A DNA stretch of 63,985 nucleotides, filler included, from Octopus bimaculoides (taxonomy: Eukaryota), in the NCBI RefSeq assembly GCF_001194135.2. It is 5 parts of 4 records of this genome, joined end to end, with 100 filler letters (N's around TTAATTAATTAA, not from the genome) between each part and the next. Parts side by side here need not be neighbours in the genome. Positions count along the whole stretch, not along the records: positions 48,193 to 62,872 come from NC_068981.1; 4 more parts are not named here. One strand, given 5' to 3'. The notes under the pieces are model-generated. The model searched no databases and was not told where the DNA came from. It worked only from the letters and a program-made list of their open reading frames with translations. Shown in pieces: positions 48,193-62,872 of this stretch. Both the position numbers and the translations under genes were made by a program. The first letter of the stretch is position 1, and the number at the start of each line of letters is the position of its first letter.

Positions 48193-48510
48193 AGACCGGG
48201 CGTTGTAAGTGTTTATTGAGCGAAAACACCTAAAGCTCCACGAGGCTCCGACAGGGGATGGTGGCGAACCCTGCTGTACTCTTCCACCACAACTTTCTCT
48301 CACTCTTTCTTCCTGTTTCTGTTGTACCTGTAATTCAAAGGGTCAGCCTTGTCACACTCTGTGTCACGCTGAATATCCCCGAGAACTACGTTAAAGGTAC
48401 ACGTGTCTGTGGAGTGCTCAGCCACTTGCACGTTAATTTCACGAGCAGGCTGTTCCGTCGATCGGATCAACTGGAACCCTCGTCGTCGTAAGCGACGGAG
48501 TGCCAACAAC
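48193..48510 (+). mobile_element. SINE family D, tail type 1
   Basis: Body agaccgggcgttg..gctccacgaggctccg, then gtcacactctgtgtcacgctgaat..cgacggagtgcca. Confidence 0.8.
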
Positions 48511-48714
48511 AACAGCGACCCTCTAAAACATTTATCTTCAAGAATGAGAAAGGGATACCATAGTATAAAGCTGCAAAATATTGTCTCACGTTGTTGCGAG
48601 TAAATGTTACAGGAGACTTGAAACGCTACCATTCTGATACTCAAAGAGACATGAAAGTCGTCTCCGTACTTCTGAACTCGATAAAATAAGAAACCAAAAT
48701 TTTAGGTCGTATTT

Positions 48715-49600
48715 CAATATTGGTTTCAAATTTTGACACAAGACCAGCGATTCCAGACAAAGGGGTAAGATGATTACAACAACACCTGTACTCAACTGGT
48801 TCTTATTTTATTGACCTTGAAAGGATTCATCCTTTCAAGGTAAAGTCGACCTCGGTGGAATTTGAACTCAGAACGTAAAGACGGACGAAATACCACTAAG
48901 CATTTCGTCCTGCGTGCTAACGTTTCTTCCCGCTCACTGCCTATGTCCTATTACATTATTACGAACAATATAGCATTGTTTTCTGGCTCATTCACAAGGG
49001 CACACATTTTGAGCCGGGGTTGCAGTCGATTACAACAACCCCTACTAATTAACACCTACGTATTTTATCAATCTTGCATGGTTGAATGGTTAAGTGGATC
49101 TCGGCGGGATTTGAACTAGTCGTAAAATAACGTAGCTAAATACTATAAGATATATTCTTCTTCACTCTACCAATTCGGCCAAACCGCCGATTTAATTTCA
49201 GTCAAAACCTGTTGAATTACTGAATTTTATCAGGATTAAGTTATATGACAGATAAGTTCTTTGCCAATGGAATTGGCGACAAAGTTTCGATAATTGCTAT
49301 AACGTCGCATTAATCACGTCGCTAATTTTCCTGGGAAAGGAATGAATATCATTCATTCCCTTATACTCGTATTTCAGGTTTTATTCCTAAATAACGTTTT
49401 CTGATTTAGGTACTAAACCAGTAATTTTAAGGAAGGGATGAGTCGATGTCTCCGACTCCGATATTTGGCTAGCACTTTATTTTATCGATTCCAAAAGGAT
49501 GAAATGCAAAGTTAATCTTGGCGGGATTTAAGCCAGAATATAAAAATCCGGAACAAAAACCGCAGGGCATTTTCTCTGACGATCTAACGATTCTGCCAAA
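48715..49600 (-). mobile_element. Three SINE family A copies
   Basis: Repeated reverse modules. Confidence 0.7.
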
Positions 49601-49866
49601 TAGAAAAAGAAAAAAAAACTTACTATATTTGGTAAACTAATGTGCATCACATGGAATGGACTTCAGAACGAATAAAATAAATTAAACTCTTATTTAAAGG
49701 TCAAACATCCCTAATCACACCCAAACACGCGATTCTTTGTTTCGCTTACACTTTGACTTATTTCAGTGAACCCCATTGTATTGTACTTTCGTTCAACGTT
49801 AAAATATTAAATGAATGAGGTAATTAAAAAGCGAATTAGATATATTCTATTTATATTGGTAAGTGT

Positions 49867-50150
49867 GGAGGCGCAATGGCCCAGTGGTTTGGGCAGCGGA
49901 CTCGCGGTCGGAGGATCGCGGTTTCGATTCTCAGACCGGGCGTTGTGAGTGTTTATTGAGTGAAAACGCCTAAACTCCACGAGGCTCCGGCAGGAGGTAG
50001 TGGCGACCCGTGTTGTACTCTTTCGCCCCAACTTTCTCTCACTGTTTCTTGAATAACACTACGATGGGCTGGCGTCCGTCCAGCTGGGGGGAACACATAC
50101 GCCATAGAAACCGGGCCCCATGAGCCTGGATAGGCTTTGAAAGGGCGACG
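49867..50150 (+). mobile_element. tRNA-derived SINE family D, tail type 2
   Basis: A-box tggcccagtgg, B-box ggtttcgattc. Tail gatgggctggcgtccgtccagctggggg..catacgccatagaaacc. Confidence 0.85.
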
Positions 50151-50569
50151 TTATATTGGTAAGTACAATTTATTTTATTTACCTTGTTTTAATGTTACTA
50201 TTTAAAAAAATTTTAATGTGCTAGTCAAACGAGGAGAGGGTAATGACTTCAAACTTTATAGTCCCTTTCTCAAACTATGGGTGAGATGGATGCCAAACCT
50301 AAACATCTTTAGGTCAATGTCTACAGGAAAACCAAGCACCTCTATGTAATCGCTTGGCTTGTTAGAAGCAGTATCCAAATTTTTACATTTAACCATACAT
50401 CCAATTATCTTACAAATAATAAGTTGGGCATGTTAAACCATCTAGCCCTAGATACACGTAAAAACACGGAATGGTCATTGCTGAATTGCATCTGATCATA
50501 GCTGTGCTAAATCAGAGTTAACCTGGAGTTTATGAAATAACACGGGCGTAGCAAAGGGTTCTTAATTAT

Positions 50570-50785
50570 TGGTTTCAAATTTTGGCACAAGACCAGTAAT
50601 TTCGGGGCAGGGGTGTAACTAGATTACATCGACCCCAGTGCTCAACTGGTTCTTATGTCATTAACCCCGAAAGAATGAACAGCAAAGTCGACCTCGGCGG
50701 AATTTGAACCCAGAACGTAAAGACGGACGAAATGCTGCTAAGCATTTTGCTCGGTGCAGTAACGACGCAGCCAGCTCGCCACCTT
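50570..50785 (-). mobile_element. SINE family A
   Basis: Reverse full copy. Confidence 0.8.
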
Positions 50786-51198
50786 AACAGCCCTTGATTA
50801 TTAAAATGGATTCACTGTTAGACTTCGAATTTGCAGTGGCTTTGTGATAAGAAGCTTCCTTNNNNNNNNNNNNNNNNNNNNNNNNNNNNNNNNNNNNNNN
50901 NNNNNNNNNNNNNNNNNNNNNNNNNNNNNNNNNNNNNNNNNNNNNNNNNNNNNNNNNNNNNNNNNNNNNNNNNNNNNNNNNNNNNNNNNNNNNNNNNNNN
51001 NNNNNNNNNNNNNNNNNNNNNNNNNNNNNNNNNNNNNNNNNNNNNNNNNNNNNNNNNNNNNNNNNNNNNNNNNNNNNNNNNNNNNNNNNNNNNNNNNNNN
51101 NNNNNNNNNNNNNNNNNNNNNNNNNNNNNNNNNNNNNNNNNNNNNNNNNNNNNNNNNNNNNNNNNNNNNNNNNNNNNNNNNNNNNNNNNNNNNNNNNN

Positions 51199-51231
<33 letters not shown>

Positions 51232-51530
51232 TGTACTTGTGTGTGTGTTTGTGCTTGTCCCACACCATCGCTTGACAACCGACGTTGGTGTGTTTACGTT
51301 CCCCCAACTTAGCGGTTCGGCAAAAGAGACCGATAGAATAAGTACTAGGCTTACAAAGAATAATTCCTGGGGTCGATTTGTTCAACTAAAGGTGTTACTC
51401 CAGCATGGCCGCCCTCAAAATGACTGAAACAAGTAAAAGAATAAAAGTATAAAGGAAAGACAAGTAAAGAAAAATATCAAGTTAGAAAATCTGTATAAGA
51501 GATGAAAGTAGTAACTATACTGAGAAGTAG

Positions 51531-51903
51531 TGTTTATCGCCACATCAATATGACTGTTCCATACGAACCGACGTTACTACCGTTTTTAACCTCAGGATGA
51601 TCCTCCTCCAGCTGGTTGTCGATGCAATCTGCACCCGATACATATTGCAAGCAAAGGAACAAACCCCTACCATCTTCTAGCAGACGACGGGACCACTACT
51701 GAGGATGGGTACAAATAGCCCGAAACTGTACGGTCAGGTAGTCCCGTCGTCTGCTAAAAGACGGTAGGGGTTCGTTCCCTTGCTTGCAATATATATTGGA
51801 TGCAGATGGCATCGATAACCAGCTGGACGAGGATCTTCCTGGAGTTAAAAACGGTAGTAACATTGGTCCGTATGGAACAGCCATATTGATGTGGCGATAA
51901 ACA
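51531..51903. mobile_element. 373-bp foldback element, two 168-bp arms with a hammerhead in the loop
   Basis: 51531-51698 is an imperfect reverse complement of 51736-51903. Confidence 0.85.
51691..51743 (+). ncRNA. Type I hammerhead ribozyme motif at hairpin apex
   Basis: gaccacta-CTGAGGA-T-GGG(tacaaatag)CCC-GAA-ACTGTACGGT-C-aggtagtc: canonical CUGANGA core, near-palindromic helix III and a GUC triplet. Confidence 0.75.
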
Positions 51904-52329
51904 GAATAAAAATATATCATATGTTAAATAATAATTGTATTAGGGGAACACAATAGCCTGATTGATACCCCTACTCTTGTGTTCTGAGGTGCTGCTTAGA
52001 TAGGTGAAGGGCGGAACTTCGACTTGTTCTTTATGTAGGTATACGCTGCCTTAGAGGTTTTCTGGAAGACCAGTTGTTTAATCCATGGCAGGGTGGTGGT
52101 TCAGTCGGTGCATCGGTACGCGGGGCCGAGAGAACTAAGATGGGACCCATGACTATCTGCCGCCCCCCGTTCAAAAATAGCAAGAAAATCACAAGGAGCT
52201 AAAACCTGAGAACCCTTAAATTCTGAGAAAACACTTTGTCAAATTTCTCTTGCAGGCCCTTTTCTCCAGGTAATCTCTGGTGAAGCAGATATATGATAAC
52301 AGAAATTATACTCTTGCATGTTTTTAGTT

Positions 52330-53670
52330 TTAGTTCTCCACTCCTTTCAATCACCACATTGGAGCATCACTTTCAAGGGTTTAGTCGAACAAATCAACCC
52401 CAGCACTTAATTATTATTTTAAAGTCTGGACTATATTCTATCAGTCACTTTTGCCGAACTACTACGTTGCTGGGACAAAACTTAAGCATACACTGATTTT
52501 CAAGCGGTTGGGCTTGAACAAAGACAAACAGACACAGACACATGCACGGACACACACGACGTCTTCCACTCAGTTTCCGTCAACCAAATTCAGTTACAAA
52601 GTATTCGTCGGCCCGGGTCTATAGCAGAAAACACTTGTCCAAGGTGTCGCGCAATAGGATTGAACTCGAAACCACGTAGTTGCAGAGCGATCTTCCTAAC
52701 CACACATTGATAATAGATATCACAATATAATACGTTTCTTCTGCCGAGGTCGACTTTGTCTTTCATCCTTTCGAGGTCGATAAATCAAGTACCAGTAGCG
52801 TACTGGAGTCGATCTAATCGACTGGCCCCCTCCCCCAAAATTTCGGGCCTTGTGCCTAGAGTATGAAAGAATATAATACATTTCTCAAAGCGACGAAAAT
52901 ATTTTTGGCAAATTAAATTTAAATGTTGAAATGAATCTAACGGTTTTTGTGTGTACCTTAAATGGCTTATAAACACCTTCCACGCTGCAATTGGTTTCGT
53001 TCCAGCACACGATCTCAGATCAGGTCACTTGCTATGCAAGTACATCTCCGTAAACATAATATGTTTATAACAATTCTTTGTAATTTTTGCGCCAGGCCAG
53101 CGGTTTTGAGGAGAGGGGACAAGTCCATTACATCGATATCAGTGCTCAACCGGTACGTTGTTTTATCGATCTGGAAAGGATGAAAGGTAAAGCTGGCATC
53201 GGCTGAATTTGAACGCAAAGAGTCGAATTAAATGCTGCAAAGCATTTTGTCCGGCGCGCTAAGGGTTCTGCCCAGCTCGCGACCTTTATAATAATGCTTT
53301 CTGTTATAGACATAGGGCCTGAAATTTGAGGGGAAGGAGACTCGTTGATTACATTGACCCAGTGCTCAGCTGGTACTAAATGTAAAGTCGGAAGAAATGC
53401 CACTAAGCATTTTATCCGACTTGCTAATGATTCTGCAAATACACCACCTCATAATAATAGAAATAATATAACATGAGAGTAGAAGTAATACAGTATACGT
53501 AGTCGTGGTGTGGCCGAATGGTTAGGAAGTTTGGTTCATAACCACGTAGTCCAGGTTTTGATACCTCTGCGTAACATTCAGTGAAAATGCTGTTTTCTAC
53601 GGCCTTGGATCGATCCATAGCTTGTGAGTAAAATTCGGTTGACGGAAACTGTAAGGAAGCTCATCGGGTG
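52330..53670. mobile_element. Cluster of SINE family B and A copies
   Basis: B(-) 52330-52700, A(+) 52740-52870, A(-) 53070-53440, B(+) 53500-53670. Confidence 0.7.
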
Positions 53671-53694
53671 GATTGTAACTATCTATCTATGGGC

Positions 53695-53991
53695 CCATTT
53701 CAAGCCTAGCCAGGCTCATGGGCCCAGTTTGCCGGTTTCTATGGCGTATGTCCCCACCCCCAGCTGGACGGTACGCCAGTCCATCGCAGCCTTACTCAAG
53801 AAACAGCAAGTAAGAATGAGAGAAAGTTGGGGCGAAAGAGTACAACAGGGGTCGCTACCACCCCCTGCCGGAGCCTCGTGGAGCTTTAGGTGTTTTCGCT
53901 CAATAAACACACACAACGCCCGCTCTGGGAATCGAAACCGCGATCCTCCGACCGCGAGTCCGCTGCCCTAACCACTGGGCCATTGCGCCTC
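53695..53991 (-). mobile_element. SINE family D, tail type 2
   Basis: Reverse complement of 49867-50150. Confidence 0.85.
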
Positions 53992-54344
53992 NNNNNNNNN
54001 NNNNNNNNNNNNNNNNNNNNNNNNNNNNNNNNNNNNNNNNNNNNNNNNNNNNNNNNNNNNNNNNNNNNNNNNNNNNNNNNNNNNNNNNNNNNNNNNNNNN
54101 NNNNNNNNNNNNNNNNNNNNNNNNNNNNNNNNNNNNNNNNNNNNNNNNNNNNNNNNNNNNNNNNNNNNNNNNNNNNNNNNNNNNNNNNNNNNNNNNNNNN
54201 NNNNNNNNNNNNNNNNNNNNNNNNNNNNNNNNNNNNNNNNNNNNNNNNNNNNNNNNNNNNNNNNNNNNNNNNNNNNNNNNNNNNNNNNNNNNNNNNNNNN
54301 NNNNNNNNNNNNNNNNNNNNNNNNNNNGGGAGTGTGTTTGTTAC

Positions 54345-54710
54345 TCTTTTACTCTTTTACTCTCTTTTACTTGTTTCAATCATTTGACTGTGGCCATGCT
54401 GGAGCACCGCCTTTAGTCGAGCAAATCGACCCCAGGACTTATTCTTTGGAAGCCTAGTACTTATTCAATCGGTCTCTTTTGCCGAACCGCTGCATCGGTT
54501 GTCAAGTGATGTTGGAGGGACAAACACAGACACACAAACACATACACACATACATATATATATACATATATACGACGGGCTTCTTTCAGTTTCCGTCTAC
54601 CAAATCTACTCACAAGGCTTTGGTCGGCCCGAGGCTATAGTAGAAGACACTTGCCCAAGATGCCACGCAGTGGGACTGAACCCGGAACCATGTGGTTGGT
54701 GAGCAAGCTT
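54345..54710 (-). mobile_element. SINE family B
   Basis: Near-identical to 3575-3967. Confidence 0.85.
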
Positions 54711-56039
54711 GTTTATTTTAAGTGATTCGTTATCATAATAGAGGCGGGGAGTGTGTTTGTTATGAACAAAAATAATATAAAATTAAAAATTCATAATATT
54801 CAGGGTAATCCCGTTATTATTTTCCATGCGCATATTTGTACATATTAAGTCCGCATATAAGTAACAGGATGTGTTTCAATAGGCGACTTCATTGGCTATT
54901 AAAAGTGTGTTTCAGTAAAGATAGATAATGGGAGAGAGAGAGATAGAGTAAGAAAGAGAGAGGGAGGAAAAAGAAAGAGAGTGAGGGTGTGAAAGAGATA
55001 CTGAAAGGAGAAAGCAGTTATTTCTAAGCCGAGAGGGGAAAGGCTTGTCAACTGATAGCTCTAAAACAGCTTTTCTGACAACAGCCTCTTGACTCATCTG
55101 CCTATTTTCTTCTAATGCATGCACTGTTGACACAATAACCCGTATCTATCAATTACCCACTTGAAACACATTGGTATAAATTGTCTGATTATGTCAGCAG
55201 GACAAACAACTACATAAAAAACAGAAGTGAAAGTTGAGAACGAGATATAATCTGTATACTCCACACGGAAGTAAAATGCAATATATATATTTACTATACT
55301 TAAAGATACTGTATCAGTGTGGACATTTTTTTTTTTTCTCTGATTTGTAACTAACGCTGTGAATCAAAAGTTTTATCGTACATTTTTCAATTTACTTTTT
55401 TATCACAGTTTCTTTCTTATTTGATTTCTAACACGCAGCTCAGCATGACATGGTGATCTAAATGATCCATTAAAACGTCGGTCTCCAAGGAGAGTGTATC
55501 TTGTATCTTGTACCTGTTACCTTTTACAGAAGTACACTAACTATAAATGAAAAAAAGAAAGAGAGAGAGAGAAAGAAGGAAAAAGCTTCTATCATTCAGG
55601 CATTTGTTTCCCGGGGTTTACAGGGGTCCTCCGAACACAATGAGTCAAGAGACAAGCCGAGCTTCGCTTCGAACTAGGCCATTGAGAGCTAATCGGGAAC
55701 AGAAAACACATTAAATAATGTAGACCTACATCTCTAACCTTTTGATTATAGGGCGTCTGCTCGATAAGCGAAAAGTTGACCTTGGACTAAACGACGAAAA
55801 TAACTGCTGTACCAAATATTCTACGTGTTTTTGACTGTCACGTAGCACTCTCAACAACAAACCAGTTTATTGCTGAATGCACAGAATGATGCATCTCAAC
55901 AGTGAGATCCAAGCATTTTTGGGTCTCACTAATGGAACACCTAAGAACCCTTAACACACACGCACGAGCGCGCACGCACACACACACACACACACACATA
56001 CACACACACACACGTACACACACATCAAGTTGCTATTTT

Positions 56040-56422
56040 TTTTGGCACTCCGTCGGTTACGACGACGAGGGTTCCAGTTGATTCGATCAACGGAACAGCC
56101 TGCTCGTAAAATTAACGTGCAAGTGGCTGAGCACTCCACAGACACGTCTACCCTTTACGTAGTTCTCGGGGAGATTCAGCGTGACACAGAGTGTGAAAAG
56201 GCTGGCCCTTTGAAATACAGGTACAATAGAAACAGGAAGAAAGAGTGAGAGAAAGTTGTAGTGAAAGAGTACAGCAGGGTTCGCCACCATCCCCTGCCAG
56301 AGCCTCGTGGAACTTTAGGTATTTCGCTCAATAAACACTCACAACGCCCGGTCTGGGAATCGAAACAGCGATCCTACGACCGCGATACCGCTGCCCTAAC
56401 CACTGGGCCATTGTGCTTCCAC
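56040..56422 (-). mobile_element. SINE family D, tail type 1, full length
   Basis: tRNA-like head at 56350-56422 and tail matching 48330-48510. Confidence 0.85.
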
Positions 56423-57046
56423 TACATCAAGCTGTATGTTCTACATAACGTGAATGCAGTGTAAGAACGGCATAATGCCGCGGTATTCATCTCGAGAGAG
56501 TATTTCATATAGACTTATAGTGCTAAAAATTAAAAAACAACAAAAAGCACAGAAGTAGCAGGAGTACAAAAAAATGCCCAGCATAGAAACATAAAAAGGA
56601 GGAGGATATGTTCTCTCTTCATCGTTTATTAACCGAAAATCATCACAATTATGCTTTGTCGATAATATTGCTCATTTTGCTGGCAAGAACAGCAAAATGC
56701 TGCTGGGTATAAATGAGTGAACATGAAGAACAGATTGAGACACATACCGAAAAGAAAAAAAAAACAAAACAAAAAACAAAAAACATGGTTTCTAGACCGG
56801 ATGGTAAGATGAACGAGTCATGAGGAAAGCGGGAAAGCATATGACATGAGAAAGCAAATAAAAAGCTTATGATAAACAACACAAGTATTTATTTTACTTA
56901 GAAGGTCTTCTGACCACACAATAGAATTATGACAAGACCTAAGCGAAGGAATCCTTATTAGGAAAGAATGTGATTCTATATAAAAAAACATGTAGGAAAA
57001 CGAGACAAACCAAGAGCTGAACTAAATTCAAAACCTAAGACAGGAG

Positions 57047-57094
<48 letters not shown>

Positions 57095-57447
57095 AACTGG
57101 AGCTGTGAGTTTCACACCAGTCCGATCATCAGGTGAAACACACTGGTGTGAAACTGAGTCATGAGACAAACCCTCAGCTGTTCTCTAGAACATGTATTGA
57201 GCACTCCCTTCTTTCTTGTTAGTCATTAATAGCATACGCATTTATATATANNNNNNNNNNNNNNNNNNNNNNNNNNNNNNNNNNNNNNNNNNNNNNNNNN
57301 NNNNNNNNNNNNNNNNNNNNNNNNNNNNNNNNNNNNNNNNNNNNNNNNNNNNNNTATAGTTGAAATTTACAGAAAAACAAAAGAGGAAGTGAGGTGTATG
57401 AACAACAAGCAGATGTTTTAGTTTGACGCTCGAGAAAGTGAGAAAGT

Positions 57448-57483
57448 CTTTTACGTTTCGAGCCTATGCTCTTCAACAGAAAG
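57448..57483 (-). ncRNA. Atypical minimal hammerhead-like motif
   Basis: Minus strand CTTT-CTGTTGA-A-GAGC(ATAG)GCTC-GAA-ACGT-A-AAAG. The core has an A6U substitution. Confidence 0.4.
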
Positions 57484-57544
57484 GAATAAGAGAAAATATA
57501 CAGAGAGAGAATAAAAGAAAAACTTGTGGATTTAGCGGTCAAGC

Positions 57545-57593
<49 letters not shown>

Positions 57594-57899
57594 CGTGTGT
57601 GTGTGTGTGTGTGTATACATATACATATATATATACACACACATGCACACACACACACACACATACACATGTACGGCCTCTTGAGTCATCTGATGCCTTG
57701 TCAGTGGAACTTAAGTAGGAGAAATCTTTGCAGAAAAAAAGGAAACCCGTTATATATATATATATATATATATATACATGATTGAACGGAAATGTATGTA
57801 GTGATGAAGCGAATTTTTTAGCCAAACGGCTTAGCCTTTGCACCTCTGACTGCACGTCTGTGACCTGTCTTTGGTTCATCAGCGGAACATCTGAGGCGC

Positions 57900-58125
57900 A
57901 TTCTTCTGTGTCTATTTTATCTTTAACTTGTTTCAGTCATTTGACTGCGGCCATGCTGGGACATCGTCTTGAAGGGTTTTAGTCGAATAAATTTACCCCA
58001 AGATTTATATCTTTAAAGCCTAGTACTTACTCTATCGATCTCTTTGCCGAACCGCTAGTTACGAGGATATTAACACACCAATACCGGTTGTCAAGTAGTG
58101 GCGGGGGACAAATACAGACACAAAG

Positions 58126-58207
<82 letters not shown>

Positions 58208-58450
58208 GTGTGTGTGTGTGTGTGTCTGTGTCTGTGTTTCTCCACCTCCACTACTTGATCACCGGTGTTAGTGTGTTTATATCCTATATATATATGACGG
58301 GCTTCTTTCAGTTTCCGTCTGCCAAATGTCCTCGCATGGCTTTTGTCGGCCTGAGGCTACAGAAAAAGACACTTACCCAAGGTGCCATGCAGTAGGACTG
58401 AACCCGGGACTATGTGGTTGGGAAGTAAGCTTCTTACCACACAGCCACGA
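57900..58450 (-). mobile_element. SINE family B with expanded internal (CA)/(TG) arrays
   Basis: Head and 3' modules separated by microsatellites. Confidence 0.8.
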
Positions 58451-59769
58451 AGAACTCCGAAAAACATAAATAAATCAGGCAGTCTTCGTCTTTCTCCAAA
58501 CGTTATTATTTATAGCTTTATCTTCTTCGAGCTTCACTGTTAAAAACGATTTATTCAACGTCTCTCGAACTTTCTAAATTCTTATAATGTAAACAATGTA
58601 CAATTACCTGTGATAAGAACAAAATTTTTTAAACAGAGGAAGAATTTCGCAGAGTTTGTTTGATCCAGTGGAAGAACATCCATCATGTTTACAGAATATG
58701 TGGGTTCTTGTCACACGGGCACCCATCGACATTTTCTATCTAAGAGGATTTTATTAAACCCAGTATTTACGCGTTATTATTCACAGCTTCATCTATTTCG
58801 AGTTCCTCCATTAAAAACAATATATTTCATTTATTTATTCTCAAGTCGAGTTCTGTGAACATGACATTCCATTCCAAACGAATTAGTTCGACGATAGTAT
58901 CACTCTTGGTGTATGTTTAGTATTAAACATGTCAGTAGGCGCACCAGCAAACTAGTCACTCGAGTAATGATCTTCCTAAATTACACGGCTGCGAATTAAA
59001 TAATTAGCGTAGATGACGAGACCAAACAATGCGGAAAGAGTTCCACTGCTTAACTGTTTCTAAGTGTTTTCCTTGTTTGATCTGTAAATTCGTCACTTGA
59101 CAACACATTACCCAGTCATTGCCACACGCAAAACATATCTCAGAATATTATCTAACGACTTACTAGTATTTCCTTGTTTGGTTTGCATAGTGTGTCACAT
59201 TATTACACATCATTCACCGCCAAACACACATCTCCACCCTCTCTCTTTTCTTCACTCGATGCATATATATATATATATATATATCAAATTAATAGCACAA
59301 AACAAATTCAGATACAAAAATAGCAATAGAAGTCCAAGGGTATTTACCGTCAATATTATTCGGTTGATATATCATGGTACATTCTATATATATACAGTCT
59401 ATAACAAACATGTATATTTAAGGCGGCGAGCTGGCAGAAACGTTAGCACGCCGAGCGAAATGCAAAGCGGTATTTTGTGGATCTATTTTAAAACGGGGGC
59501 CACATTTTTCATTAATGTTTTACGTAGTGTTTTTGGTACGGAAAGATTTTCAAACTTCGTATACTTATCTATTTTGTGTTATAGAACAGAAAAATATTTT
59601 TGTATTCGAATTTATTTCATGTAAAAAATTGTCTTATTTCGATAATTTCAACCAATCACTGACAAGTATTCAGTTGTTTATATTTACTCCTTTGGCTGAT
59701 TAAGCGATGTAAAGCGTATTTAATCTCCATACCTTCGTTTTATTTGCTTTCTTCATTTTAAATTTGCTT

Positions 59770-59805
59770 TAACCCTAACCCTAACCCTAGGGTTAGGGTT
59801 AGGGT
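59770..59805. repeat. Telomeric-like (CCCTAA)3-(TTAGGG)3 palindrome
   Basis: taaccctaaccctaaccct|agggttagggttagggt, running into an N gap. Confidence 0.8.
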
Positions 59806-60331
59806 NNNNNNNNNNNNNNNNNNNNNNNNNNNNNNNNNNNNNNNNNNNNNNNNNNNNNNNNNNNNNNNNNNNNNNNNNNNNNNNNNNNNNNNNNNNNNNN
59901 NNNNNNNNNNNNNNNNNNNNNNNNNNNNNNNNNNNNNNNNNNNNNNNNNNNNNNNNNNNNNNNNNNNNNNNNNNNNNNNNNNNNNNNNNNNNNNNNNNNN
60001 NNNNNNNNNNNNNNNNNNNNNNNNNNNNNNNNNNNNNNNNNNNNNNNNNNNNNNNNNNNNNNNNNNNNNNNNNNNNNNNNNNNNNNNNNNNNNNNNNNNN
60101 NNNNNNNNNNNNNNNNNNNNNNNNNNNNNNNNNNNNNNNNNNNNNNNNNNNNNNNNNNNNNNNNNNNNNNNNNNNNNNNNGAACCTAATAATGTTTATGT
60201 ATGTATGTAAATAGGAATACAAAAAATGGGACAAGAACGCAAAACATCCAGACAGACGATAGAAAAAAGAAGGATGTGTCATTCGGAATTTTTCTTTCTT
60301 CAGTCGATTTCCAGATTATCTGTGCCATTTC

Positions 60332-60376
<45 letters not shown>

Positions 60377-61049
60377 CATGCACACATATACAAGGCAGTG
60401 AGCAAGCAGAGTTCGAATTTCGCCGACGTCGATTTTGTCTTTCATCCCTTTCGAAGTCGATAAAAGAAGTTACCAATAGAGCACTGGGATCGATCTAATC
60501 GACTTATCCCCTCCCCAAATAACGCTGACCTTGTGCCAAAATTTGAAACCGATAACTACATATCGGTTATATAAATACATATATGTACATACATGTACTT
60601 ATATATTTATATATGTACTTATATACATATAAGCACATACACAAATGTGCCTTTGAGAGAGGGGAGGGAGAGGGGGGAGAGAGAGAGGGTGAGAGAGAGA
60701 GAGAGAAAGAAGTTTATTGAAACCGGATGCTTATCCCACGATTCGAGTTTTAAGCCTGAAGAGTGGTGTGACGCGAAACTCGAGATAACTTTTCAGTTAT
60801 CCCAATATTTTCCTGTGTTTTTATTTTTCAGTCAGTAAGGTGTGACTTGTGGGAAGTTTAGTTGTTATTTTCAGCACGTCAAGTAACCATGTGACTGATC
60901 CTTCATTTACTTCAATCCAACTATTTACGAGAAATTCGTATATTTATGTATTTGACCAATGTTGCCATTTCAATCTCGAGTAGCTTGAGTAAGTGATCCG
61001 AAACAACGAGTCGACATTTCAGAGAAACGTGCATGATAACGACAACGGT

Positions 61050-61051
61050 GG

Positions 61052-61098
<47 letters not shown>

Positions 61099-61290
61099 GT
61101 GATGGTGATGATGATGATGATGACGACGACGATGATGATGATGATGATGGTGACAATGATGATGACGATGATGGTGACAATGATGAAGACGATGATGATG
61201 ATGATGATGATGGTGATGGTGATGATGATGATGACGACGACGACGACGATGACAGTCATGATGATGATGATGATAAGGAGGAGGAAGAGG
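61050..61290. repeat. (GAT)n/(GAC)n microsatellite
   Basis: Triplet array. Confidence 0.95.
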
Positions 61291-61798
61291 ATGATATGTC
61301 GTCGTCTACATTTTTTTTTTGGTGATTCTTCTGAAAGCATTTTTTTTTACATGTTTTATAAGATTTAAAAAAAAATTTATTGCTGTTTTTGATGTTTTCA
61401 TCGTCTTCGTTGTTGTTGTTGCTGTTGTTGTTGTTGTTGTTGCTGTTGTTGTTGTTGTTGTTGTTTCTATTATAGCTCTTTTCTTCTATCTTTTCACTGT
61501 TCATTGTTAGTGTTGTTGTTCTCCACCCAACCTGCTCTCCAACTCTCCTTTTCATTCTCTCTGTTTCCCCCTCTTTCCATCCACCGTTTTCTACCCTCAC
61601 ATCATTGTTTTCATCTTTTCATCTTTTCTATTTTATTGTTAAATTCACAAATGTTATTTAATGTTTATCACTGATGACATTTTGCAATTAACTCACAAAC
61701 ACACACTCATTCGCATGCACACAGAGATATAGTTATCGATGCATATGCATATATACATATGCACCCGTGTGTGAATGTATATGTATATGTGTGTGTAC

Positions 61799-61841
<43 letters not shown>

Positions 61842-62304
61842 AACACATACACAAACAAACAACCAAGGTGACAGGCACAAAGTCAACGAAGCATATATAT
61901 GGTATTTCACTTTCCACTGTAACTGGTAAGATCATGACACGAGGACTTTGACTGCAAATAAAAGTAAAAGTCACGAAGTGACATAATTTGATACAATTGG
62001 CCTGATGTTCCATTCCGCAAGAAAGAACGAAACAAATAAACAAACTCTTTCTTTGATCCAATCAGTTAGACCCGCTGGGTGATGTGGTCGCATTCATCCC
62101 ATTTTCCCATGCTGGCATAGCCATAGGAATAGTCATGGCCATGCAGTTGAGAAATTCGCTTCGTAATCACGTAGTTTCAGGTTCAATCCCACTGCAAAGA
62201 ACCTTCATCAAGTGTCTTCTAGTATATCTCCTGGCCCACCAATGCCTTGTGAGGGAATTTTTTAGATGGAAATTGTGTAGAAGCCCATATATATCATCAT
62301 TATC

Positions 62305-62872
62305 ATTATCATCATCGTTTCACGTCCGCTTTCCATGCTAGCATGGGTTGGATGATTTGACTGAGGACTGGTGAAACCAGATGGCTACACCAGGCTCCAA
62401 TCTGATTTGGCAGAGTTTCTACAGCTGGATGCCCTTCCTAACGCCAACCACTCAGAGAGTGTAGTAGGTGCTTTTACGTGTCACCCGCACAAAGGCCANN
62501 NNNNNNNNCAGATGGCTACACCAGGCTCCAATCTGATTTGGCAGAGTTTCTACAGCTGGATGCCCTTCCTAACGCCAACCACTCAGAGAGTGTAGTAGGT
62601 GCTTTTACGTGTCACCCGCACAAAGGCCAGTCAGGCGGTACTGGCAACGGCCACGCTCAAAATGGTGTATTTTATGTGCCACCCGTACAAGAGCCAGTCC
62701 AGAGGTACTGGCAACGATCTTGCTCGAAAATCCTTACACCAGTCACGGGCACAAGTGCCAGAAAGGCGACGCTGGGCACAGGTGCCATCCCGATTTCGCT
62801 TTCGCTTGCCCCAATAAGTCTTCGCAAGCTGAGTTTCGTGTCCAATGAAGGAGACGACGTTGGCATGGATGC
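62305..62872 (-). mobile_element. RTE 3'UTR-derived repeat, long variant
   Basis: Same motif as 45565-45830, extended 5'. The reverse-orientation relative is at 63720-63985. Confidence 0.7.

What the first reader, a model, noticed from the sequence alone, without database searches (positions are those of the whole stretch)
51531..51903. Rod-like 373-nt foldback with a canonical GUC hammerhead exactly at its apex
Seen: two arms of exactly 168 nt pair along their length, mostly with transition mismatches. The 37-nt loop is entirely hammerhead core, helix II and helix III (CTGAGGA-T-GGG..CCC-GAA-ACTGTACGGT-C), so the long stem is an extended helix I. Unlike the other foldbacks, the hairpin promotes rather than masks the ribozyme fold. 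No ORF or clear TSD. Inference: a non-coding self-cleaving hairpin element resembling viroid-like or retrozyme RNAs. Cleavage after 51735 would give a nicked long dsRNA, a possible siRNA or editing substrate. The helix I base pair next to the core is mismatched in this copy, so it may now be inactive.
Basis: partly seen in the sequence, partly recalled or inferred. Interest (0 to 1): 0.85.

Follow-up and report, generated by a model that had tools for sequence, protein, structure and literature searches.

The report
Hammerhead-capped inverted repeat in octopus DNA
A 373-bp inverted repeat in an octopus-type genome does carry a typical animal hammerhead ribozyme motif at its tip, but it looks like one decaying head-to-head relic of a ribozyme-bearing retroelement, not a working viroid-like RNA.

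Summary
Arms 51531-51698 and 51736-51903 are 168 nt each and align without gaps, with 20 mismatches, 16 of them transitions. The 37 nt between them (51699-51735) carry every conserved hammerhead core base in type I order.

The motif also has traits of animal type I hammerheads: a 4-bp helix II, a loop 2 containing the CAAAUA of the Schistosoma ribozyme, a bulged base before helix II, and a weak helix III with a palindromic GUAC loop. A chance origin is unlikely, about 4e-6 per foldback.

Rfam's hammerhead models do not detect the motif. The predicted lowest-energy fold pairs part of the core. Helix III is stable only as a dimer. Helix I has no internal loop to contact loop 2. The strand without the ribozyme folds better. 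The arms differ only by point substitutions, which points to a duplication, not an evolved RNA rod.

I found no second copy, tandem repeat, target-site duplication, coding sequence or relative. The host is an octopus, and the tools hold no octopus genome.

Best reading: a solitary, roughly 12%-diverged head-to-head relic of a hammerhead retroelement (Penelope-like or retrozyme lineage), joined within helix I. The way it formed is inferred.

The parts
51531..51698 (.). Left arm, an inverted copy of the right arm. On + strand RNA it is the 5' strand of a 168-position extended helix I.
   Evidence: ungapped against the reverse complement of 51736-51903, with 148 Watson-Crick pairs, 5 G.U and 15 non-pairs.
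51694..51698 (+). The five helix I positions nearest the apex. Three are mismatched (51694 C x A, 51697 U.G, 51698 A x A). This may be the remnant of the native helix I 5' strand, or the junction of the two copies.
   Evidence: 3 of 5 mismatched against 17 of 163 elsewhere, Fisher p = 0.0125 (post hoc).
51699..51705 (+). Hammerhead core, 5' half: C3 U4 G5 A6 G7 G8 A9 (CUGAGGA).
51706..51706 (+). Unpaired U between A9 and G10.1. [quoted passage not shown]
   Evidence: PMC4209133.
51707..51721 (+). Helix II hairpin: 4-bp stem GGGU/GCCC (51707-10 / 51718-21) and loop 2 ACAAAUA (51711-17).
   Evidence: helix II forms in every fold. CAAAUAG aligns with loop 2 of the Schistosoma Sm1-derived N79 ribozyme.
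51722..51724 (+). Hammerhead core, 3' half: G12 A13 A14.
51725..51734 (+). Helix III: A15.1-U16.1, C-G and U.G, closed by the palindromic tetraloop GUAC. It is stable only as an intermolecular 10-bp duplex.
   Evidence: hairpin 0 kcal/mol, self-dimer -13.4 kcal/mol. This architecture is described in PMC4209133.
51735..51736 (+). C17 and A1.1. The predicted self-cleavage site lies between 51735 and 51736 (GUC|A).
   Evidence: Follows from the standard hammerhead numbering. Cleavage was not tested.
51736..51903 (.). Right arm, the 3' strand of helix I. It is probably the native sequence downstream of the ribozyme, because it begins AGGUAGUCC, resembling CUGGUAUCC / CUGGAUUCC of the Schistosoma-type helix I and loop 1.
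   Evidence: That this is the native arm is inference.

Best explanation
This is a solitary, old, neutrally decaying inverted duplication in an octopus genome. It is centred on a genuine animal type I hammerhead of the classical, dimer-dependent kind.

It most likely descends from a hammerhead-bearing retroelement of the Penelope-like element / non-LTR retrozyme lineage. One copy (51699-51903, + strand) starts just upstream of the ribozyme core. A second copy, inverted and truncated at its 5' end (51531-51698), starts at or within 2 nt of the self-cleavage site. Both run outward to the same last base.

Inferred mechanism: two first-strand cDNAs, or one cDNA that snapped back on itself, were joined through the short natural complementarity of helix I. 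The ribozyme core was left as the unique spacer, and helix I was extended to 168 bp.

If the + strand is transcribed, it would form an imperfect 168-bp double-stranded RNA capped by the ribozyme. Self-cleavage at 51735|51736 is expected to be poor for four reasons: helix III needs a partner copy, the loop 1 / loop 2 contact is lost, the 1.1/2.1 pair is broken, and a competing fold is more stable.

Shown: the structure, the motif, the lack of selection signal, the solitary state within the piece, and the host clade. Inferred: the retroelement origin and the joining mechanism.
For: - Motif genuineness. All core positions and three helices are present and chance is unlikely. The motif has the specific traits published for animal type I hammerheads: a 4-bp helix II, a short helix III with a palindromic loop, and a bulged base before stem II (PMC4209133). 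Loop 2 and the core align with the Schistosoma Sm1-derived ribozyme (sequence from PMC12550524).
- Duplication, not an evolved rod. There are no indels in 168 positions and 16 of 20 differences are transitions. G.U is not in excess. The minus strand folds better.
- Real and old. The arms differ by 11.9% (Jukes-Cantor 0.13), which excludes a single-molecule assembly chimera.
- Head-to-head architecture. Penelope-like element insertions often have an inverted 5'-truncated copy next to the unit, forming inverted repeats. Their hammerheads sit in the terminal repeats near the 3' end (PMC8557442). Animal retrozymes are reported as non-autonomous derivatives of these elements (bioRxiv 10.64898/2026.07.22.740005).
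- Junction in helix I. Mismatches are enriched in the 5 positions nearest the apex (p = 0.0125).
- Poor monomer activity is expected.
- Host is an octopus. Cephalopod genomes are known to hold Penelope-like elements and Hammerhead_1 loci (PMC6962438).
Against: - No other copy of the arms or the ribozyme could be examined, so there is no direct link to any Penelope-like element or retrozyme consensus.
- The tested ORFs of the 14.7-kb piece show no reverse transcriptase or GIY-YIG domain.
- No target-site duplication is present.
- Rfam hammerhead models do not match.
- Published Penelope-like element hammerheads are mostly 'minimal' variants without helix III (PMC7761336), whereas this one is the classical retrozyme type.
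- A fold-back at the DNA level would give the same picture.
- The enrichment of mismatches near the apex is a post hoc test on 5 positions.
Confidence: 0.42

Rival explanations
1. It is one copy of a dedicated hairpin-shaped mobile family. Either it is a retrozyme whose roughly 373-nt monomer is itself a near-palindrome, integrated here as a unit opened at the distal tip, or it is a MITE-like element. Its RNA would be a ribozyme-capped long double-stranded RNA, processed by self-cleavage, Dicer or ADAR.
For: - The length of 373 nt lies in the 150-450 nt range of animal retrozyme monomers, which are described as highly self-paired (PMC7229834).
- GC is 47%, below 50%.
- The two outer ends are exactly co-terminal.
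- The ribozyme core is intact.
Against: - There are no tandem copies and no second copy in 14.7 kb, and no target-site duplication.
- The perfectly symmetric arms and the better fold of the non-ribozyme strand argue against selection on the RNA.
- The intact core is not significant: P is about 0.16 that 27 constrained positions escape mutation at this age.
- Word-based protein searches of arm ORFs found nothing. This is a weak negative.
Confidence: 0.22
2. A solo genomic hammerhead was already present, left by an older retrozyme or Penelope-like element insertion. It was then turned into a palindrome by a DNA repair or replication event: fold-back priming or template switching at the short inverted repeat formed by helix I. 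Retrotransposition played no part in making the inverted arm.
For: - The centre of the palindrome is a short natural inverted repeat with a 37-nt spacer, which is the known substrate for fold-back inversions (general knowledge).
- There are no indels and the divergence is neutral.
- There is no target-site duplication.
- The locus is rich in repeats and microsatellites.
Against: - This mechanism needs a second end-joining exactly at 51531.
- Nothing distinguishes it from the cDNA model with one copy.
- Inverted copies are a documented, frequent product of Penelope-like element integration (PMC8557442).
Confidence: 0.2
3. The inverted repeat has nothing to do with ribozymes, and its spacer resembles a hammerhead by chance.
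For: - Rfam hammerhead covariance models give no hit at E<=10.
- The 37-nt spacer has no unusual folding energy (z = 0.13).
- A genome of gigabase size is expected to hold on the order of a thousand descriptor matches by chance (rate).
Against: - The probability is about 4e-6 for a given spacer in register.
- The descriptor did not ask for loop 2 CAAAUA, the palindromic loop 3, the 4-bp helix II or the bulged base, yet all match the published animal type I design (PMC4209133).
Confidence: 0.08
4. It is an assembly or library artefact, a chimeric palindromic read in a draft scaffold.
For: The scaffold is a draft with five N gaps in 14.7 kb. It has a 100% identical 131-bp duplication around a 10-N gap at 62378-62629.
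Against: The arms differ at 20 of 168 positions. An artefact made from one molecule would give identical arms. The foldback is 330 bp from the nearest gap.
Confidence: 0.03

Closest known systems
Classical animal type I hammerhead ribozymes (Schistosoma Sm-alpha/Sm1, newt satellite 2, retrozyme hammerheads)
   Same: It has the same core, the type I topology and a GUC cleavage triplet. Helix II is 4 bp, and loop 2 contains the same CAAAUA as Sm1/N79. Helix III is short with a palindromic loop, implying activity as a dimer (PMC4209133, PMC7229834).
   Different: - Helix I is a continuous 168-position duplex, not about 6 bp followed by loop 1.
- The 1.1/2.1 pair is broken.
- N7 is G, and there is an extra U before G10.1.
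- Rfam RF00163 and its relatives do not detect it.
Metazoan non-LTR retrozymes (PMC7229834; bioRxiv 10.64898/2026.07.22.740005)
   Same: It is non-coding with GC below 50%, carries a type I hammerhead, and has a unit size in the 150-450 nt range. The RNA would be strongly self-paired.
   Different: Retrozymes are head-to-tail tandem repeats, each unit bounded by hammerhead cleavage sites. Here there is one hammerhead and no direct repeat, and the arms are in inverted orientation.
Penelope-like element insertions with pseudo-LTRs and an adjacent inverted 5'-truncated copy (PMC8557442, PMC4209133)
   Same: It has a head-to-head inverted-repeat architecture with a hammerhead in the terminal region. 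The target-site duplication is variable or unclear. Both arms end at the same base, as expected for two copies of one 3' end.
   Different: - No reverse transcriptase / GIY-YIG ORF was found nearby.
- Both copies are extremely truncated, at 168 and about 205 nt.
- Most hammerheads of these elements are minimal variants lacking helix III (PMC7761336).
Inverted 5'-truncated retrocopies made by twin priming (L1) or by snap-back self-priming of cDNA
   Same: These give two inverted segments of one template, joined at a point of short complementarity. Here that point would be helix I.
   Different: Twin priming inverts different parts of one template and does not duplicate the same 168 nt. The analogy rests on general knowledge only.
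Long inverted-repeat hairpin RNA loci and MITE-derived hairpins
   Same: It is a long, nearly perfect hairpin that could feed Dicer or ADAR if transcribed.
   Different: No target-site duplication, family or expression data are available. No such locus is known to carry a ribozyme as its loop.
Viroid-like and delta-like circular RNAs with hammerheads (Avsunviroidae, PMC7936874)
   Same: It has a rod-like predicted fold of a few hundred nt with a hammerhead.
   Different: It is integrated in host DNA and has a ribozyme in one polarity only. The arms are symmetric and free of indels, with no sign of selection on the RNA.

Membership tests
Hammerhead ribozyme, type I | Conserved core C3 U4 G5 A6 N7 G8 A9 / G12 A13 A14 / A15.1-U16.1 / H17, in that order | tested here: met
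   51699-51705, 51722-51725, 51734-51735.
Hammerhead ribozyme, type I | Three-helix junction with helices II and III closed by loops and helix I open to the flanks | tested here: met
   Helix II is 4 bp, helix III is 3 bp, and helix I is formed by the arms. This fold is 5 kcal/mol above the lowest-energy fold.
Hammerhead ribozyme, type I | Base pair 1.1-2.1 closing helix I at the core | tested here: not met
   A51698 x A51736 mismatch. The next pair is U.G.
Hammerhead ribozyme, type I | Loop 1 / loop 2 tertiary contact of full-length natural hammerheads | tested here: inconclusive
   Loop 2 is canonical-like, with CAAAUA. Helix I has only a 1x1 C x A mismatch at position 5 and no internal loop.
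Hammerhead ribozyme, type I | Match to the Rfam covariance models (RF00163 and the other hammerhead families) | tested here: not met
   No hammerhead hit at E<=1 on the piece or at E<=10 on 121 and 65 nt. The reason is not resolved.
Hammerhead ribozyme, type I | Site-specific self-cleavage | not testable with these tools
   Needs in vitro transcription of monomer and dimer constructs.
Metazoan non-LTR retrozyme | Head-to-tail tandem repeats of 150-450 bp, each with one type I hammerhead | tested here: not met
   There is one hammerhead in 14.7 kb. The arms have no direct repeat and there is no tandem array here.
Metazoan non-LTR retrozyme | Multicopy family in the genome, expressed as circular RNA | not testable with these tools
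   No octopus genome or transcriptome can be searched. Indirect searches were empty.
Metazoan non-LTR retrozyme | Non-coding, GC below 50% | tested here: met
   The arms are 46-47% GC. The ORFs have no homologues.
Penelope-like element | ORF with reverse transcriptase and GIY-YIG endonuclease | tested here: not met
   No Pfam domain in the 8 longest non-trivial ORFs of the piece. Shorter fragments were not tested.
Penelope-like element | Inverted 5'-truncated copy abutting the unit, with a hammerhead in the terminal repeat | tested here: inconclusive
   The arrangement fits (PMC8557442). Without a family consensus, the arms cannot be shown to be 3' ends of such an element.
MITE / foldback DNA transposon | Terminal inverted repeats flanked by a target-site duplication | tested here: not met
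   No direct repeat of 4-20 nt within 6 nt of either boundary.
Viroid-like / delta-like circular RNA | Self-cleaving ribozymes in both polarities and an RNA structure kept by selection | tested here: not met
   The descriptor finds no motif on the minus strand. The arms have no indels, no G.U excess, and the minus strand folds better.
microRNA precursors (weak Rfam hits mir-6536, MIR8788, mir-1913) | Score at or above the family's gathering threshold | tested here: not met
   46 bits against 100, 32 against 124, and 23 against 105. These are generic long-hairpin matches on both strands.

The most novel reading that the evidence does not exclude
In octopus, and perhaps wherever Penelope-like elements mobilise retrozymes, hammerhead self-cleavage and helix I complementarity systematically set the junction of the inverted copies. 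This would create a class of ribozyme-capped long hairpins. That would give the hammerhead of these elements, whose role is still called unknown, a concrete job in integration. It would also provide a source of self-nicking double-stranded RNAs for ADAR or Dicer in a heavily RNA-editing animal.
Probability: 0.12. Interest if true: 0.75.

Novelty: new variant of a known kind. Interest (0 to 1): 0.4.

Why it matters
Type I hammerheads are common in animal genomes, and cephalopods are known to carry them, so the motif alone is ordinary.

The unusual feature is the geometry. The inverted duplication is centred exactly on the ribozyme, and the second copy begins at the cleavage site. If that junction recurs across copies, it would tie ribozyme cleavage and helix I pairing to the poorly understood tandem/inverted integration products of Penelope-like elements. 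It would also make the open question of what their hammerheads do testable with a genome survey.

As a single decayed copy with no sign of selection, the locus itself probably has no function.

Tried and rejected
- Rfam scans at three scales found no hammerhead family. They gave only sub-threshold microRNA-like hits typical of any long hairpin or microsatellite.
- A search for further copies in the piece by seed repeats and by blastn with word size 7 found none.
- The 20-mer GGGTACAAATAGCCCGAAAC had 0 hits in viral contigs. It had one hit in metagenome contigs, which has no CUGANGA upstream and lies in bacterial-looking sequence, so it is a chance match.
- The protein-word route to spurious ORFs of sister copies failed. 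The 74-aa ORF and a mixed alignment of arm peptides from four frames found nothing.
- Exact ORFs of the window are not on record, so the source assembly could not be pulled in.
- Pfam found nothing on the eight longest non-trivial ORFs. ARAGORN found no tRNA.
- A target-site duplication search found nothing.
- A full-text search for the ribozyme sequence found nothing. The supplement of PMC8557442 is not held.
- I considered and dropped a Pol III box B reading of GGTTCGTTCCC (51768-51778), because there is no box A at the right distance.
- I considered that the foldback might be part of the adjacent SINE. It is not: the SINE tail ends about 55 nt upstream.

Full report
**1. What is there**

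The piece (48193-62872) is a draft eukaryotic scaffold. It has five N gaps, CA/TA/TGA microsatellites and several interspersed repeat families, and no convincing coding sequence. A peptide read from one of its SINE-like repeats matches an Octopus bimaculoides uncharacterized protein at 92% identity, so the host is an octopus or a close relative.

There are 20 mismatches: 16 transitions (11 A.C and 5 G.U on the + strand) and 4 transversions. The + strand RNA folds at -267.3 kcal/mol, z = -33.6 against shuffles.

**2. The apex**

The 37 nt between the arms read CUGAGGA-U-GGGU-ACAAAUA-GCCC-GAA-ACU-GUAC-GGU-C. In standard numbering:

- C3-A9 = 51699-51705
- extra U = 51706
- helix II = 51707-10 / 51718-21
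- G12-A14 = 51722-24
- helix III = 51725-27 / 51732-34
- C17 = 51735, with cleavage between 51735 and 51736

Every conserved core position is present.

A descriptor requiring the core, at least 3 bp in helices II and III, and at least 4 of 6 pairs in helix I finds only this site on both strands of the piece. It finds 4 sites per 20 Mb of composition-matched random sequence, or 14 per 20 Mb without the helix I requirement. About 0.005 sites are therefore expected in the piece. The chance that the spacer of one given foldback is a hammerhead in register is about 4e-6.

The motif also shows features the descriptor did not ask for. These are the published hallmarks of animal type I hammerheads (PMC4209133, PMC7761336):

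- a 4-bp helix II
- a short helix III capped by a palindromic loop (GUAC)
- an unpaired base at the 5' end of stem II

Loop 2 contains the same CAAAUA(G) as the Schistosoma Sm1-derived N79 ribozyme, and core and loop align (N79 sequence from PMC12550524). I conclude that the motif descends from a real hammerhead.

One result speaks against this and remains unexplained. No Rfam hammerhead covariance model reports it, even at E<=10 on 65 or 121 nt.

**3. Does the hairpin help the ribozyme?**

Probably not.

- The lowest-energy fold of the whole element and of a 63-nt apex construct pairs A2.1-G7 (ACUGAG) with residues of helix III. It is 5 kcal/mol more stable than the hammerhead-compatible structure.
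- Helix III alone has no predicted stability. Two copies form a 10-bp intermolecular helix III of -13.4 kcal/mol. This is the dimer-dependent design known from newt, retrozyme and Penelope-like element hammerheads (PMC4209133, PMC7229834, PMC7761336), and the locus has no second copy in cis.
- Natural type I ribozymes need an internal loop in helix I to contact loop 2. Here helix I is a continuous duplex with only a 1x1 C x A mismatch at position 5, and the pair next to the core is A x A.

**4. Rod-like RNA or duplicated DNA?**

Several observations point to duplication.

- The arms differ only by point substitutions, with no bulges or indels in 168 positions.
- Transitions that keep pairing on the ribozyme strand (G.U, 5) are not favoured over those that break it (A.C, 11; p = 0.21).
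- The RNA of the opposite strand, which has no ribozyme, folds better (-294.7 kcal/mol).
- Five of the 16 transitions lie in CpG.

This is what neutral decay of an inverted duplication looks like, not an RNA kept by selection. The divergence between the arms is 11.9% (Jukes-Cantor 0.13), so the structure is old and is not a single-molecule assembly chimera. The intact core is not evidence of constraint either: 27 constrained positions escape mutation with P of about 0.16 at this age.

**5. Context and family**

The left flank (about 51255-51475) is the 3' part of a SINE whose other copies lie inverted at 52380-52476 and 54383-54491. Its A-rich tail ends about 55 nt before the foldback, so the foldback is not part of it.

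Within the piece:

- There is no second copy of the arms or ribozyme in 14.7 kb.
- There is no tandem array here.
- There is no target-site duplication.
- The longest ORF across the foldback (74 aa, minus strand) has no homologue or domain.

The tools hold no octopus genome, and indirect routes were empty:

- the ribozyme 20-mer in viral contigs, and in metagenome contigs where the single hit is a chance match
- arm peptides in the protein collection
- exact ORF look-ups
- a full-text sequence search

**6. Most likely origin**

[quoted passage not shown] Retrozymes are now argued to be non-autonomous derivatives of those elements (PMC7229834, PMC4209133, bioRxiv 10.64898/2026.07.22.740005). 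Insertions of Penelope-like elements are typically 5'-truncated and 'often' carry an inverted 5'-truncated copy directly adjacent, which forms inverted repeats. Their hammerheads lie near the 3' end (PMC8557442).

The locus fits a minimal version of that architecture. One copy runs from just upstream of the core to 51903. An inverted copy runs from the cleavage site (within 2 nt) to 51531. Both end at the same base.

I infer that the two cDNAs, or one snapped-back cDNA, were joined through the natural complementarity of helix I. That explains why the core is the unique spacer and why helix I appears extended. Two small observations agree:

- Three of the five positions nearest the apex are mismatched, against 17 of 163 elsewhere (p = 0.0125, post hoc). 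This is expected if a short native, imperfect helix I survives at the junction.
- The right arm starts AGGUAGUCC, resembling the helix I / loop 1 3' strand of Schistosoma-type ribozymes. This suggests the right arm is the native one.

Cephalopod genomes are known to hold Penelope-like elements and Hammerhead_1 loci, with 235 in the giant squid (PMC6962438).

**7. Rivals**

- A dedicated hairpin family or palindromic retrozyme monomer cannot be excluded without the genome (0.22).
- A DNA-level fold-back at a pre-existing solo hammerhead gives the same picture (0.20).
- Chance (0.08) and artefact (0.03) are unlikely, for the reasons above.

**8. Verdict**

The claims that the hairpin favours catalysis and that the element is viroid- or retrozyme-like as it stands are not supported.

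This is a new arrangement of a known kind of element, seen once and decaying. Its interest lies in the hypothesis it suggests for how hammerheads shape Penelope-type inverted insertions.

Noticed in passing
window 48193-48519, 49865-50051, 53799-53991, 56029-56422: These are four copies, in both orientations and 85-94% alike, of a tRNA-related SINE-like repeat. A peptide read from the first copy matches an Octopus bimaculoides uncharacterized protein (A0A0L8H1P9) at 92% identity, which identifies the host clade. ARAGORN calls no tRNA in them.
   Followed up: partly
window 51255-51475 (+), 52380-52700 (-), 54383-54713 (-), 58285-58435: This is a second SINE-like family, with an internal TG/TA microsatellite and a GTAAAAGA-type tail. 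One copy lies directly upstream of the foldback. Another, at 54383, runs into an N gap.
   Followed up: partly
window 62378-62629: Two 100% identical 131-bp units are separated by a 10-N gap (62499-62508). This is most likely a scaffolding or gap-closing artefact, not a real tandem duplication.
   Followed up: no
window 58064-58285: A second foldback has 79-nt arms, 85% complementary, around an (AC)n(TG)n palindromic microsatellite. It is probably two repeat copies lying head to head. It accounts for the sub-threshold Rfam 'mir-3149', 'mir-1277' and 'sno_ZL1' hits.
   Followed up: no
window 57552-57673, 60334-60401, 61777-61858: Rfam microRNA-family hits (mir-297, mir-466, mir-3688) have E-values down to 1e-12 but lie below their gathering scores and occur on both strands. 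They fall on CA/TA microsatellites and are artefacts.
   Followed up: yes
window 61052-61274 and 61409-61465: Long trinucleotide arrays, (TGA)74 and (GTT)19, create spurious low-complexity ORFs of 110-139 aa on both strands.
   Followed up: no
window 51768-51778 (mirrored in the left arm): GGTTCGTTCCC resembles a Pol III box B / tRNA T-arm (8 of 10 fixed positions), 33 nt downstream of the cleavage site. There is no box A at the expected distance, so it may be chance. Schistosoma Sm-alpha elements combine Pol III boxes with a hammerhead.
   Followed up: partly
window 62603-62793: There are three tandem units of about 65 nt, 60-78% alike, forming a minisatellite at the end of the piece.
   Followed up: no
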